45,721 nt of DNA, taken from positions 40,264,423 through 40,310,143 of the forward strand of contig NC_068994.1 of the NCBI RefSeq assembly GCF_001194135.2. Direction: 5' to 3'. The stretch comes from Octopus bimaculoides. Its lineage: Eukaryota. Positions 20,606 to 39,127 of the stretch are shown here, piece after piece; position 1 is the first letter of the stretch, and the number at the start of each line of letters is the position of its first letter. The notes under the pieces are model-generated. The model saw only the letters and a list, made by a program, of their open reading frames with translations, was not told the DNA's origin and ran no database searches. The position numbers were made by a program, and so were the translations under genes.

Positions 20606-20986
20606 ACAAAACATTCTTGATGTACAAAAACACTTAATTACTCTCCTAATTAACTCACACATTTGTCTCCAATTTGCTGTTTTTACAAATGAAACTTATT
20701 AACTCAAGAGCAAAAACTCTCTCTCAAACACAAATCTATTTAAGAAATCAATTGTAATTGATTTTGTTCCTTTGTGTAATTTTGTAAAATTCCAAAGTTA
20801 AAGGTATCTGCAATATTTAGACTGAGATCTTTCACTAAATTGTATGCATTAGTTAATGAACAGACAGTGAGTGAATGTATGTGTTATGGCTAGCTTTGGA
20901 CAAGTAATCCCTTGACCACTAGTCAAATGATACTGTCATATTTATCAAACTTGCAAATGCAAATGTATACAAATAGTTGATGTATA
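20606..20986 (+). repeat. 381-bp near-identical inverted duplication, copy 1
   Basis: Base-by-base comparison with the reverse complement of 38747-39127 gives 2 substitutions and no indels. Confidence 0.95.
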
Positions 20987-21199
20987 CGTATGTGTATATG
21001 TATGTGGGTATATATATATATATATGTGTGTAATATCTAAATGTTTGAATAGTTTAGTATGTAGTCATGTAACAACCTTTACACTAGTGTGTTGACACAG
21101 AATTTTAATCTATCAGTTTATAAGATACTTTTATGTATCTGTGTATGTATATGTGCATTCTTGTATGTATGTGTGTGTATGTTTTTGAGCATGTAATAT

Positions 21200-21256
<57 letters not shown>

Positions 21257-21729
21257 TATTAATGCATGCATATACACACATACTTTGCACTGGTGTATTG
21301 TCATACTATTTTAACTTATCAAAATTACATGATACACCAGAGTTGCTTAACCACAGTCCTGATTGAATAAACACATGATCATAAACAACCTAGCCATGAC
21401 CCACATGTCATTTTATATAACTGAGAAAACATTGTCTAATGTCCTCCAATTTTTACATCTTAACATGGTAAGGCATGATTTCTAGTAAGCTAAATAACTA
21501 AGTGCATGGTCTCTTATTGGTTCAAACAGATTCATTTATAAATGCGTATGTGCTTGTGTATGTATATCTATATATATGTGTATGAATATATCTATGTATA
21601 TGTACTTGAGTGTGTATATGTGTATGAATGTATCTATGTATATGTGCTTGTGTGTCTATCAATGTTTATATGTTGATGTATTTTGTGTGTGACCATGTGT
21701 GTTATTGGAACAGATTTCTCCTTGCACAG

Positions 21730-21866
21730 CTGAGGAAAATATTTGAGCACTGGCATGAGTGTCTCAGAGAAGACAGTTCTTACATCAAATCCTACCAGTA
21801 TGAAGCTGGTGAACAATATTATTGTTCAGTACTTGGGCCAACAAAAGAAATACAAGTTACATATTG
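21730..21866 (+). other. Candidate internal exon (137 nt), gene unknown
   Basis: Acceptor atttctccttgcacag|, donor tg|gtaagg; the only open frame from that acceptor is LRKIFEHWHECLREDSSYIKSYQYEAGEQYYCSVLGPTKEIQVTY(W). No partner exon or homology recognised. Confidence 0.3.
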
Positions 21867-21878
21867 GTAAGGTATCAA

Positions 21879-21918
<40 letters not shown>

Positions 21919-22215
21919 GCCATCTCCTTCCACTGAAAATGGGTTTCCTAGTGAGTGGTACAAGTCATTCTATGAATTGACAATATAACTATGTGTATGC
22001 ACATTAGCCATGTATACACACAAACATACATAGTATATATATATATATATATACACATTTGTTTTGTGCATGTATTTACATGCTTAAATATGGTTGTACG
22101 CATATGTATGTCTATAAATAAATATATTCCTATACTTCCACAGGATGCATTCATATACACACACTCTCATACACCAATTACATATATACAACTGTGTGTG
22201 TGTGTGTGTATATAC

Positions 22216-22267
<52 letters not shown>

Positions 22268-35059: not shown

Positions 35060-35111
<52 letters not shown>

Positions 35112-36379
35112 TTATTCCTCCCAATGGTACCTTGAGTGCTATATCATTTGTATGATGTGGATAATTTTTCCTTTAGCATTGCTCAGATGATGTTGGTATC
35201 AACTTTAAATTTGTTCTCTGCAAAAATCATGCTCATATCACATCACAACTCTAAGACAGAACTATTTCTCTACTACTGACCTGAATCTCTTTAACATCAT
35301 GCTAAGATGTTCTCATAATATTAGCCTATTACATTAGCCTATTAGCATTTAATCTGGCCATATCCAGCTAAAATATTCTACCTGCTTTATGTTAAAACTC
35401 GCCAAATCTAACCTTTCACACTTACTCAGTCTTGTCATTCTAAAAATATATAATACACCCATTGAAATCTTGAAGTTGCAATATAATGTTTGATTAATTC
35501 AAAACAATGAGAATAAATAAGCAATGCATTTGACAAAGAAATTTGAATACAAAATGGTTAAACTGGCAGATTTATATAACATCTCACTTATCTCCAAGTG
35601 ATCTTTCAGGCTCAGTTCATAATGTTAAATGTATTTAAAACCAACACACTGGACTATGAGAAAACACAAGAAAATAATGTGCACTTTTGTAATTGTGTAT
35701 ATTAAATGATATTTATCTCTCACTGGACAGAGTACATTTTTTGTTGATCCTACCTACAATGGAACTGCAAACTATGTATACACACACATGCGCACTTACA
35801 CACACACACATATGTTTATATGTATGACATGCATATTTGTGTGAACAAATGAAAGAGAGCAGCACTTCACACATTCATGACTTAAGTTTCGTGGGTGCAT
35901 AGGACACATCTATCTCATTAGATGCAAGGAGCAGAATGAGAGATTTTGAGAGAAATTCAAGATGGTTCCTAGGTGTTAAGCGTCTATTGTTCATCTCAGG
36001 TCACATGATATTAATGCTATTTAAGTAACACCGGAAACTTTAATTTTAAGCCCATGTATCTGGACAGGATGTTAAAAATAAAGAATATAGTTGTGTCACA
36101 TTCATAGCATTAATACTACATAACCTGAACTGACCAAGAGAGTCCTAAGACTTAGAAGCTATCATGAATTTCTCATAAAATCTCTCATGCTGCTCTTAGC
36201 ACCTTATGTAATGAATTTGTTGTATGGATCAACGAAACTCTAAGTCGTGTGGAGGTGACTCAAACTGTATAATTTCAAAATCAAGACTGCCATCTCTAGG
36301 TACTTAGCATGTATGGAAGTGTACCCACCACTCCTAATCTTGTATTTTTTCTACAGATATTAGGCTCCACATAGAGTTC

Positions 36380-37030
36380 ATTAAGTACCAGCATGAACAT
36401 CAGATTGGTCTTTTGGACTAAGGGCAACACATGCAGCAGAAAATTTATTGAAAATGCCTAAGCAGATTTTTATGGGAAGTTACAATTTGGGAAATGCCCA
36501 CAGCATACTCCAAAGAAATGGTACAGGGACTGTATTGATGACAATCTAGTGAAACTGATAATAGATTTAAAATTCTGGAATGCAAAAGTGACTGATAGAA
36601 ATGAATGGAGGTCTCTAGTAAAGGAAATTATTGCTAGATTTGTGCTAGTCAAAATACTTTGAAAAAGGGAAGTATCATTAAGGCACTAGCTGATATTAAG
36701 CATTGGAAATACAGTTTTGAGAGTGACATGCCCCATAAAAAGCTGGCTATATAAGCCACATAAAATTATGCCATAATTCGCAAAATTGAGATGCGTCAAC
36801 AATGAATTGCCCGCTTTTTATGAGAACAACACCTGTGTTGTATAATTGATAATCTGTCAGAGTAAATCTGATTTGAAAAGGCACATGAAAGTGCATAAGA
36901 TTACCATACCACAAGTAACCTATAAAAATTCTGTAGAAATTTTGAATCTTAGGTCAAGTGCTGGTCTTAAAAGAAATCTCAGAGCACATGATGGGGATTA
37001 TCACAATGATGCAGATAAACTGAGATATAA
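36380..37030 (+). mobile_element. RTE-clade LINE 3' remnant
   Basis: MPKQIF/(frameshift)YGKLQFGKCPQHTPKKWYRDCIDDNL...W...DRNEWRSLV matches the RTE pattern RLPKQ.FYG.L..G.R..G.PK.R.KD...DR..WR; a terminal degenerate zinc finger CQSKSDLKRHMKVH follows. Confidence 0.75.
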
Positions 37031-37122
37031 GATTAATTTTGCACAATCTTTCAGTAGACATTACTTCATTAGAAGTTTAATAATAAAAAAATGCTGTTGT
37101 TTGATTTTATAATAGTATAAAA

Positions 37123-37806
37123 TACTGGTTCTCAACTGGGGTCCATATTACTGTTTGGGGTCCATATTACTGTTTGTGGTCCATATAAAATTTTGTTGCT
37201 AATAAATTGCTCATACTTCTACTATTCTTTTATTCTTTTATTCTTTTACTTGATTCAGTCATTTGACTGCGGCCATGCTGGAGCACCACCTTGAAGAGTT
37301 TTAGTCAAAAAAATCAACTCCAGGACTTATTCTTTGCAAGCTTAGTACCTATTTCATCACACTCTTTTGCTGAACTGCTAAGTTACAAGGATGTAAACAC
37401 ACCAACATCAGCTGTCAAGTGATGATTGGGGTACAAACATAGACACAAAGACACACACACACATAAATATATACATATATATATATGACGGGCTTCTTTC
37501 AGTTTCCGTTTACCAAATCCACTCTCAAGGCTTTGGTTGGCCCAAGGCTATTGTAGAAAACAGTTGCCCAACATGCCATGCAGTGGAACTAAATCCAAAA
37601 CCATGTGGTAGGAAAGCATGCTTCTTACCACACAGCCATGTCTGCACCTATATACAAAATATGGTAACAAATTTTTTATATAATTTCTAATAATATTTAA
37701 TTATAAAAATATAAGAATTTTAAAACATTGAATGGCTGTGATGGTCCATCCAAGCAAAAAAGGAACCAGAGGGGGTCCACAGGGGAAAAATGGTTGAGAA
37801 TCACTG
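37123..37806. mobile_element. hAT/Charlie-like MITE containing a nested type I SINE
   Basis: TIRs tactggttctcaac / gttgagaatcactg (CAGTGGTTCTCAAC-type); degenerate 8-bp flanks gtataaaa / gtcttgaa (5/8); internal ggggtcc motifs; 20-bp tandem duplication at about 37138-37180. Confidence 0.7.
37225..37650 (-). mobile_element. Type I SINE (near full length) nested in the MITE
   Basis: ttcttttacttgattcagtcatttgactgcggccatgctggagcaccacc...gacgggcttctttcagtttccgtttaccaaatccactctcaaggc...cttcttaccacacagccatg. Confidence 0.9.
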
Positions 37807-38126
37807 GTCTTGAAGTTTGAAACGGAGATAAAAAAAATTGCAGACATACAGGACATAATGTTTAGTTTGGATCTAAAAGAGTTAGATAGAAGTGGTTTTA
37901 TACATCTTGTTCTAAGTGCAAGCCTTCACTTGTACAGATATGTGGGTAATATGATGCATACAACATATGACAATTTGGTAATAAGAGCGTGGCTGTGAAA
38001 GACATTGGAAGAAGCACTGATATATGATCAGTGTTGGTCCTCACAAACGACATGGTTAAAGAACTCTCAAAATGGTTAGACGTACAGGACAAGACCCATG
38101 AAATCATGTCAGCATGTATGTGTGTG

Positions 38127-38167
<41 letters not shown>

Positions 38168-38746
38168 GCATGCGTGTGTGCATGCTTGTGTGAAGTGATA
38201 TAGTGCATAGAAAAAGGGGAACTCAAAATAAGTTGAAGAGTTCATTTATGCATTTATTGGAAGTTTCAATTTCCAGTAACTTAATATAATATAAAAATAC
38301 ACATACACACACGCGCACACAAATGAATATATGCATGATTATGGTAATTGGGTAAATTTAAATACTGTATGTACAAATAGGGAGGCTTGTCTGTACAAGC
38401 ATGAATTCACAATTATTGATACAAATACATATAACACCAGCAAACATCCACGAATATACCAACATACATCCATATATGCATACATGCACCCACATACATA
38501 CATTATATATCAATATGTAAATGTATGTACACACACACACACGTGCAAAAATACACACAAATGCATATATGTGTGTGTATGTGTGTATGCATATAAATAT
38601 GTAAATACATACATATACTTACAAGCATTGTGTAATATTATAAATTTAAATGCTGTGTGAATTCACTGCTGCGAATGGTACATTCATAAATACACAAACT
38701 ATTCATATAAATGGAGATTAAATACACCAATATACACATATATACA

Positions 38747-39127
38747 TATACATCAACTATTTGTATACATTTGCATTTGCAAGTTTGATAAATATGACAG
38801 TATCATTTGACTAGTGGTCAAGGGATTACTTGTCCAAAGCTAGCCATAACACATACATTCACTCACTGTCTGTTCATTAACTAATGCATACAATTTAGTG
38901 AAAGATCTCAGTCTAAATATTGCAGATACCTTTAACTTTGGAATTTTACAAAATTACACAAAGGAACAAAATCAATTACAATTGATTTCTTAAATAGATT
39001 TGTGTTTGAGAGAGATTTTTTGCTCTTGAGTTAATAAGTTTCATTTGTAAAAACAGCAAATTGGAGACAAATGTGTGAGCTAATTAGGAGAGTAATTAAG
39101 TGTTTTTGTACATCAAGAATGTTTTGT
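38747..39127 (-). repeat. 381-bp near-identical inverted duplication, copy 2
   Basis: Reverse complement of 20606-20986 with 2 substitutions. Confidence 0.95.

What the first reader, a model, noticed from the sequence alone, without database searches (positions are those of the whole stretch)
20606..39127. 381-bp inverted duplication (2 mismatches) bracketing a 17.8-kb segment that contains the gene's last exons
Seen: 20606-20986 equals the reverse complement of 38747-39127 at 379/381, far above the identity of any other repeat pair here. The unit has no internal TIR, tail or TSD, and the inner flanks keep faint similarity (e.g. tgaatagttt). Possible explanations: (a) inversion breakpoints with a staggered-break duplication; (b) an old inverted duplication with a recently gene-converted core; (c) substrate for a recurrent flip of the 17.8-kb interior; (d) long TIRs of a large cargo-carrying element (the 18.5-kb span is Polinton-sized, but no Polinton genes or TSD are visible); (e) scaffolding artefact. 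If one transcript covers both copies it would form a near-perfect long-range duplex.
Basis: partly seen in the sequence, partly recalled or inferred. Interest (0 to 1): 0.7.

Follow-up and report, generated by a model that had tools for sequence, protein, structure and literature searches.

The report
Short inverted repeat pair, octopus DNA
Two nearly identical ~400-base copies of a non-coding sequence face each other 17.7 kb apart in a repeat-rich, gap-containing octopus-like scaffold; they are real, but look like an ordinary old inverted duplicate whose middle was homogenised by gene conversion, not the ends of a mobile element or a proven inversion.

Summary
In detail: 20606-20986 equals the reverse complement of 38747-39127 at 379/381, far beyond chance and far above any other repeat pair in the window (next best 86.7%).

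The anatomy is richer than reported. The homologous block runs about 20578-21150 against 39149-38599. A 99.5%-identical core is flanked inside by a (TG/TA)n microsatellite and then ~100 nt at only 74% identity. Outside it has a short diverged rim that stops exactly at a 3'-truncated SINE-like repeat. The two parts therefore have very different ages (Fisher p = 2e-17).

- **Mobile-element signs:** none. No target-site duplication, no internal terminal repeats, no tail, no third copy in about 110 kb of octopus DNA, and no Polinton/Maverick or transposase domains in the interior.
- **Exons:** none detected in the interior, so "the gene's last exons" is unsupported.
- **Assembly:** the two arms sit inside different contigs separated by three gaps, so their relative orientation rests on scaffolding that I could not test.

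Best reading (confidence about 0.45): old inverted paralogous segments whose core is kept, or was recently made, identical by intrachromosomal gene conversion. An inversion origin, a low-copy dispersed repeat and a scaffolding error remain open. Interest is low.

The parts
20578..20605 (+). Left arm, diverged outer rim. GGCTAAACA is followed by an A-rich stretch with a 6-nt indel relative to the right arm, then AAAACAGG against AAAATAGA.
   Evidence: Gapped BLAST starts at 20578/39149. A collinear exact 9-mer occurs by chance in 68 of 20000 trials. Alignment.
20606..20986 (+). Left arm, near-identical core. 379/381 to the right arm, 30% G+C, stops in all six frames under both the standard and the invertebrate mitochondrial code.
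   Evidence: No other copy in the window or in fetched octopus loci.
20987..21031 (+). Left arm, (TG/TA)n microsatellite. It is 18 nt longer than in the right arm, and identity collapses here.
   Evidence: Alignment; the repeat finder D1.
21032..21150 (+). Left arm, old inner extension. It is homologous to 38599-38704 at about 74%, with indels.
   Evidence: Local score 36.5 against a null maximum of 22 in 3000 random window segments.
21151..38598 (.). Interior of about 17.4 kb. It is non-coding as far as tested: 1,646 N in three gaps, about 10% tandem repeats, SINE and SINE-like copies (23160-23380, 33365-33860, 37223-37652) and a LINE-like C-terminal remnant (36462-36659).
   Evidence: no protein homology; composition; repeat copies; LINE-like remnant, recognised from memory of such tails.
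24896..25255 (.). Assembly gap, with (TA)n on both sides.
26075..26748 (.). Assembly gap, with (TA)n on both sides.
30835..31446 (.). Assembly gap, with unique sequence on the left and (TA)n on the right. Continuity cannot be judged.
38599..38704 (-). Right arm, old inner extension (about 74% to 21032-21150).
38705..38746 (-). Right arm, (TG/TA)n microsatellite between the extension and the core.
38747..39127 (-). Right arm, near-identical core.
39128..39149 (-). Right arm, diverged outer rim, ending where the SINE-like repeat begins.
39148..39580 (-). Old dispersed SINE-like repeat ('TE-X', with an internal CA/TA microsatellite). It is 3'-truncated at about position 24 of its tail, exactly at the edge of the block. 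It is not part of the duplication.
   Evidence: 65-71% identical to copies in O. sinensis loci L005/L006 and to window copies 37223-37652 and 19797-20230. Truncation point and absence of the missing tail elsewhere near either arm.

Best explanation
The two arms are genuine, low-copy, non-coding paralogous segments of about 0.55-0.7 kb. They lie in inverted orientation in an Octopus-like genome. The duplication itself is old: its rims have diverged to a Jukes-Cantor distance of about 0.3. The central ~390 bp is kept, or was very recently made, almost identical by intrachromosomal (ectopic) gene conversion between the arms.

The converted tract is limited on the outside by the end of homology, at a junction with a truncated SINE-like repeat. 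On the inside it is limited by a length-variable (TG/TA)n microsatellite, which acts as a heterology barrier.

Shown: the mosaic of identities, the boundaries, and the absence of mobile-element hallmarks and of coding sequence. Inferred: that conversion, rather than selection or re-copying, produced the identical core, and that the scaffold orientation is right.
For: - **Two ages in one block.** The core has 2/381 differences and the inner extension 26/99 plus indels (p = 2e-17). The extension homology is real. A diverged outer rim is also present (alignment).
- **Tract limits.** The step in identity falls exactly at a microsatellite that differs in length between the arms and at the end of homology.
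- **Local two-copy repeat.** The unit occurs twice only in the 45.7-kb window. It is absent from 42.5 kb of O. sinensis and from a 20.5-kb ENA contig, while ordinary SINEs of this window recur ten or more times there at 88-93%.
- **Not a mobile element.** There is no target-site duplication, terminal repeat or tail.
- **Inside contigs.** Both arms sit about 2 kb or more from any gap.
Against: - **Conversion needs high identity.** If the core had ever diverged like the rims (26%), it could not have been re-homogenised. The model therefore needs continuous concerted evolution of a repeat of only about 400 bp across about 18 kb for a long time, which is demanding.
- **Too few differences.** Only two differences exist, so no conversion signature such as GC bias can be read.
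- **Copy number unknown.** The copy number in the source genome is unknown, because only about 110 kb of related DNA could be inspected.
- **Orientation and spacing** depend on three unverified scaffold gaps.
Confidence: 0.45

Rival explanations
1. Two members of a low- or moderate-copy dispersed repeat family (a transposable element or a fragment of one) happen to lie 18 kb apart. The near-identity reflects recent activity. The diverged inner part reflects two subfamilies or module exchange.
For: The genome is packed with uncharacterised repeats. A scan of many windows will pick up chance pairs even for families of about 1,000 copies (inference). The outer edge is the same in both copies.
Against: - There is no target-site duplication, terminal repeat or tail.
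- There is no third copy in about 110 kb.
- A young insertion into the SINE-like repeat should leave that repeat's tail on the other side of the insert, and it is not there.
- One element cannot be 99.5% and 74% identical in adjoining parts without a further process.
Confidence: 0.17
2. The arms are the inverted duplications left by a staggered-break inversion of the interior, as in the Drosophila model. In that case the 17.8 kb between them is inverted relative to the ancestor.
For: The geometry fits. The size is typical: median 321 bp, range 46 bp-1.9 kb in Ranz et al. 2007 (PMC1885836). The right arm abuts a broken repeat, as expected at a breakpoint.
Against: The model predicts duplicates of one age with sharp ends. 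Here the identity is mosaic and homology continues past the inner end. The missing tail of the broken repeat is not found at the other breakpoint. No outgroup locus could be obtained.
Confidence: 0.1
3. Assembly or scaffolding artefact. Either one contig is mis-oriented or misplaced, so that the pair is not inverted or not 17.8 kb apart, or one copy was created by gap filling.
For: The arms lie in different contigs separated by three gaps of estimated length. The scaffold looks like a short-read draft with breaks at microsatellites. The core is bounded by low-complexity sequence on both sides. The arms sit at oddly similar distances from the outer gaps, 1,960 and 2,057 bp.
Against: Each arm is embedded in about 2 kb or more of unique sequence within its contig, with distinct flanks on both sides. 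The arms differ at two sites. Their rims are old paralogues rather than duplicates of one locus. A mis-fill would have to join non-identical A-rich rims.
Confidence: 0.15
4. The arms are the long terminal inverted repeats of one large (18.5 kb) cargo-carrying DNA element, Polinton/Maverick-like or a decayed relative.
For: The span is 18.5 kb and the outer edge is the same in both arms.
Against: - There is no 6-bp or any other target-site duplication.
- The ends do not start with the AG/AGT motifs described for Mavericks (PMC8097293; sequence).
- No interior ORF of 40 aa or more hits polymerase B, integrase, ATPase, protease, capsid or any transposase, and none has any protein relative.
- The flanking SINE-like repeat is not split across the element.
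Confidence: 0.03

Closest known systems
Inverted repeat or palindrome arms homogenised by intrachromosomal gene conversion (for example primate Y-chromosome palindromes, or low-copy inverted repeats flanking human inversion polymorphisms); recalled from my own knowledge, not tested against a database
   Same: Two inverted arms have near-identity far above that of the adjoining homologous sequence. The step in identity falls at a heterology. The sequence is non-coding.
   Different: The arms here are only about 0.4 kb, against kilobases to megabases, and the spacer is about 17.7 kb. Conversion is inferred from one genome only, with no population or outgroup data.
Inverted duplications at inversion breakpoints from staggered breaks (Ranz et al. 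2007, PMC1885836)
   Same: Ancestrally non-repetitive sequence is duplicated in inverted orientation at both ends of a segment. The size lies within the reported 46 bp-1.9 kb range (median 321 bp). One arm abuts a broken repeat.
   Different: Identity is mosaic rather than uniform. Homology continues past the inner end. The displaced remainder of the broken repeat is missing. Inversion of the interior is unproven.
Polinton/Maverick elements (PMC8097293)
   Same: The overall span of 15-20 kb is bracketed by inverted repeats of a few hundred bases.
   Different: There is no 6-bp target-site duplication, no AG/AGT end motif, and none of the polymerase B, integrase, ATPase, protease or capsid genes.
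Ordinary dispersed octopus repeats in this window (the SINE at 13021-13251 and the SINE-like 'TE-X')
   Same: Short, AT-rich, non-coding repeated DNA in the same genome.
   Different: Those families recur many times in the window and in O. sinensis at 65-93% identity. The unit occurs exactly twice, at 99.5%.

Membership tests
Polinton/Maverick | Protein-primed DNA polymerase B, retroviral-like integrase, packaging ATPase, adenoviral-like protease and capsid genes | tested here: not met
   Pfam on 121 ORFs of 40 aa or more from 20000-39800 found none of these families at E <= 0.1. 68 interior ORFs had no protein relatives. Caveat: 1.6 kb of the interior is gaps.
Polinton/Maverick | 6-bp target-site duplication and AG/AGT terminal motifs | tested here: not met
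   No direct repeat of 5 nt or more flanks any plausible boundary. The arms start AAAACAGGACAAAAC (left) and AAAATAGAACAAAAC (right). Features taken from PMC8097293.
Polinton/Maverick | Terminal inverted repeats bracketing 15-20 kb | tested here: met
   Arms at 20578-21150 and 38599-39149; the span is 18.5 kb.
Staggered-break inversion duplications | Inverted duplicates of non-repetitive sequence at both ends of a segment, 46 bp-1.9 kb | tested here: met
   size range from PMC1885836.
Staggered-break inversion duplications | Duplicates of one age with sharp ends; sequence broken at one breakpoint continues at the other | tested here: not met
   Mosaic identity. The inner extension is homologous. 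The tail of the truncated SINE-like repeat is absent near the left arm.
Staggered-break inversion duplications | Outgroup shows a single copy and the opposite orientation of the interior | not testable with these tools
   No orthologous locus could be fetched. No annotated protein anchors the window.
Dispersed transposable-element family | Structural hallmarks (target-site duplication, terminal repeats, poly-A or microsatellite tail at a true end) | tested here: not met
   The microsatellite is internal to the homologous block, not terminal.
Dispersed transposable-element family | Many copies across the genome | tested here: inconclusive
   There are no further copies in the rest of the window, in 42.5 kb of O. 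sinensis or in a 20.5-kb ENA contig. This only excludes very high copy numbers, and the source genome could not be searched.
Gene-conversion-homogenised inverted repeat | A tract of near-identity inside older, more diverged homology, with limits at heterologies | tested here: met
Gene-conversion-homogenised inverted repeat | Arms more similar within a species than orthologous arms are between species | not testable with these tools
   No orthologous locus was available.
Assembly artefact | Copy at a contig end or next to a gap; halved depth; no spanning reads | tested here: inconclusive
   The arms are about 2 kb or more from gaps and have distinct flanks, which argues against a false copy. 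Depth and spanning reads are not available, and the orientation between contigs is unverified.

The most novel reading that the evidence does not exclude
The pair marks a young, possibly still polymorphic, 17.7-kb inversion (or a segment that flips recurrently by recombination between the arms) in an octopus genome, with the arms kept identical by conversion. If the region is transcribed as one unit, the arms would also form a ~380-bp perfect duplex, an obvious substrate for the extensive A-to-I RNA editing of cephalopods.
Probability: 0.08. Interest if true: 0.45.

Novelty: new member of a known kind. Interest (0 to 1): 0.2.

Why it matters
If the best reading is right, this is one more small inverted low-copy repeat undergoing concerted evolution. 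It is useful mainly as a flag for assembly curators and as a candidate site for inversion polymorphism.

It would gain interest only in two cases. One is that related species or individuals differ in the orientation of the interior. The other is that the two arms turn out to be co-transcribed and heavily edited. Nothing found here suggests a gene, a mobile element with cargo, or a new kind of system.

Tried and rejected
- **Known RNAs:** the Rfam gathering scan and the tRNA scan of the whole window found nothing.
- **Host gene, by domains:** Pfam on 121 ORFs of 40 aa or more from 20000-39800 and on 150 outer ORFs found only a mariner HTH_48 domain (most likely the ORF at 3498-3974) and a weak zinc-finger hit. 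A codon-model ranking of ORFs showed only low-complexity or repeat-derived candidates.
- **Host gene, by homology:** 68 interior ORFs were sent as one X-spaced query and gave no hits.
- **External copies of the unit:** an X-masked frame of the unit against 5.8 billion proteins gave nothing. An exact 27-mer gave nothing in metagenome, viral and prokaryote collections. An exact look-up of the 109-aa ORF next to the right arm was not on record.
- **Species and orthologue:** the mariner ORF's closest named hits are O. sinensis SETMAR-like proteins, 65-66% identical. Their loci share SINEs with the window at 88-93%, so the window comes from an Octopus or a close relative. No orthologous locus could be reached.
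- **Mitochondrial insert:** rejected, because every frame has stops under the mitochondrial code too.
- **Larger hidden inverted duplication:** rejected. Homology does not resume beyond the SINE-like repeat or deeper inside.
- **Insertion into the SINE-like repeat:** the repeat's missing tail was not found on the other side of the block or at the other arm.

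
Full report
**Observation**

The reported match is exact. 20606-20986 against the reverse complement of 38747-39127 gives 379/381, with differences at 20653 and 20717. The repeat finder extends it without gaps to 20598-21014 / 38719-39135, 417 nt at 97%. Gapped BLAST extends it to 20578-21113 / 39149-38640. One such placement has a chance probability near 1e-205. The next best non-microsatellite repeat pair in the window reaches only 86.7%. 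No third copy of the unit exists in the window.

**Context**

The window is AT-rich eukaryotic DNA full of microsatellites, SINEs and LINE or mariner remnants. The mariner ORF's closest named protein relatives are Octopus sinensis SETMAR-like proteins. The O. sinensis loci fetched through them share the window's SINE at 88-93% identity and a ~430-bp SINE-like repeat (here 'TE-X') at 65-81%. The window therefore comes from an Octopus or a close relative. The exact species was not determined.

Five runs of N with irregular lengths break the window into contigs, and most breaks sit in microsatellites. This looks like a short-read draft scaffolded with mate pairs, which is my inference.

**The gaps**

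The left arm lies in contig 18639-24895 and the right arm in contig 31447-41191. Each arm is about 2 kb or more from the nearest gap and has its own distinct flanks. Each copy is therefore supported within a contig. Their relative orientation and distance rest on three gaps that I cannot verify.

Two of these gaps have (TA)n on both sides. The third has unique sequence on one side. Since (TA)n of 8 or more units occurs 26 times in 45.7 kb, shared motifs are weak evidence of continuity. No real reading frame crosses a gap.

**Anatomy of the repeat**

Aligning the arms with their flanks shows four zones.

- **Outer rim (20578-20605).** A short stretch with a collinear exact 9-mer, a 6-nt indel and two substitutions. 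A 9-mer in that position has a chance probability of about 0.003.
- **Core.** 99.5% identical.
- **Microsatellite.** A (TG/TA)n tract that is 18 nt longer in the left arm.
- **Inner extension (21032-21150 against 38599-38704).** Aligns at about 74% with indels. The local score is 36.5, whereas 3000 random window segments never exceeded 22.

Beyond these limits no homology is detectable, either further inside or beyond the repeat on the right. The difference between the core (2/381) and the extension (26/99) is highly significant (p = 2e-17). It corresponds to Jukes-Cantor distances of 0.005 and 0.32. One homologous block thus contains sequence of two very different apparent ages.

**The right edge**

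The block stops at 39149. There a copy of TE-X on the minus strand begins at 39148, cut off at about position 24 of its 3' tail. The missing tail is not found on the inner side of the right arm, as it would be if the block were an insertion into TE-X. It is not found next to the left arm either, as it would be if an inversion had split TE-X. The junction is therefore a rearrangement scar whose partner is lost or too old to see.

**What the unit is not**

- It has no internal terminal repeats.
- It has no target-site duplication at any plausible boundary.
- It has no terminal tail, because the microsatellite is internal to the homology.
- It has stops in every frame under both the standard and the mitochondrial code.
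- It matches no Rfam family or tRNA.

The interior holds none of the genes that define Polintons/Mavericks, nor any transposase (features from PMC8097293). The arm ends lack the AG/AGT motifs.

The interior also shows no sign of host exons. Pfam gave only one weak zinc-finger hit, most likely the ORF at 36846-37109, which lies beside a LINE-like remnant. In addition, 68 non-repeat ORFs of 33 aa or more found no relative among 5.8 billion proteins, a set that includes annotated O. sinensis proteins. Exons shorter than about 33 codons cannot be excluded.

**Explanation**

The mosaic of identities is what gene conversion between old paralogues produces. A tract of near-identity lies inside older homology. 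It is limited outside by the end of homology and inside by a length-variable microsatellite that blocks heteroduplex extension.

Its weak point is that conversion needs high identity. The core must therefore have been kept similar continuously while the rims escaped, which is demanding for a 0.4-kb repeat separated by about 18 kb.

The rivals are these:

- **A young dispersed repeat seen twice (0.17).** The mosaic, the missing hallmarks and the absence of other copies in about 110 kb of octopus DNA speak against it. The source genome could not be searched.
- **Staggered-break inversion duplicates (0.10).** The size is typical according to Ranz et al., but the age pattern and the missing partner of the broken repeat do not fit.
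- **A scaffolding or assembly artefact (0.15).**
- **Terminal repeats of a large element (0.03).**

**Comparison, novelty and verdict**

The closest known things are conversion-homogenised inverted low-copy repeats and breakpoint duplications of inversions. This is a small new example of a known kind. It is a real feature, correctly spotted, with a more informative internal structure than first described. Nothing points to a new mechanism, a gene or a cargo-carrying element.

The decisive evidence is all descriptive and outside these tools: genome-wide copy number, the orthologous locus in related species, spanning long reads with depth, and RNA-seq.

Noticed in passing
window 42345-42876 and 43866-44401 (with ORFs 42852-43148, 44549-44791, 45569-45721, minus strand): A 540-bp direct repeat at 86.7% lies 1.5 kb apart, in a stretch holding three ORF fragments that resemble each other and look like the C-terminal tail of a LINE-type reverse-transcriptase protein. 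They may be tandem or nested 3' ends of one retroelement family.
   Followed up: no
window 3464-4048 (ORF 3498-3974, plus strand): A mariner-type transposase remnant. An HTH_48 domain (E = 1.4e-12) is very likely this ORF. It is 82-84% identical in DNA to two O. sinensis loci annotated as SETMAR-like, and only the N-terminal part is open.
   Followed up: partly
window 39148-39580, 37223-37652, 33365-33860, 19797-20230: Four copies of a ~430-bp SINE-like repeat with an internal (CA)n(TA)n microsatellite. The same family occurs several times in 42 kb of O. sinensis, and such elements seed many of the window's microsatellites.
   Followed up: partly
window 13021-13251 (also 14603-14758, 17188-17303, 19466-19598, 23163-23378): A short SINE family, 88-93% identical to ten or more copies in the two O. 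sinensis loci. This served as the marker that the window is octopus-like.
   Followed up: partly
window 18638/20598 and 39135/41192: The two arms lie at nearly the same distance (1,960 and 2,057 bp) from the gaps that bound the whole 22.5-kb stretch. No homology between these two outer stretches was found, so this is probably coincidence, but it is worth a look when reads are available.
   Followed up: partly
window 25461-25821: A G+C-rich island (up to 53%) sits on an 819-bp contig between two gaps. It contains a CCAA-type simple repeat and an 86-aa ORF with no detectable relatives. Its nature is unknown.
   Followed up: partly
locus L004 (ENA ERZ25067582, contig ctg10070_21x_l, 147266-167793): A 186-kb contig in an ENA 'metagenome' assembly carries a related mariner together with 7tm_1, LDL-receptor and integrase-like genes. 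It shares no SINEs with the window, so it is a eukaryotic (probably molluscan) contig from another organism.
   Followed up: no
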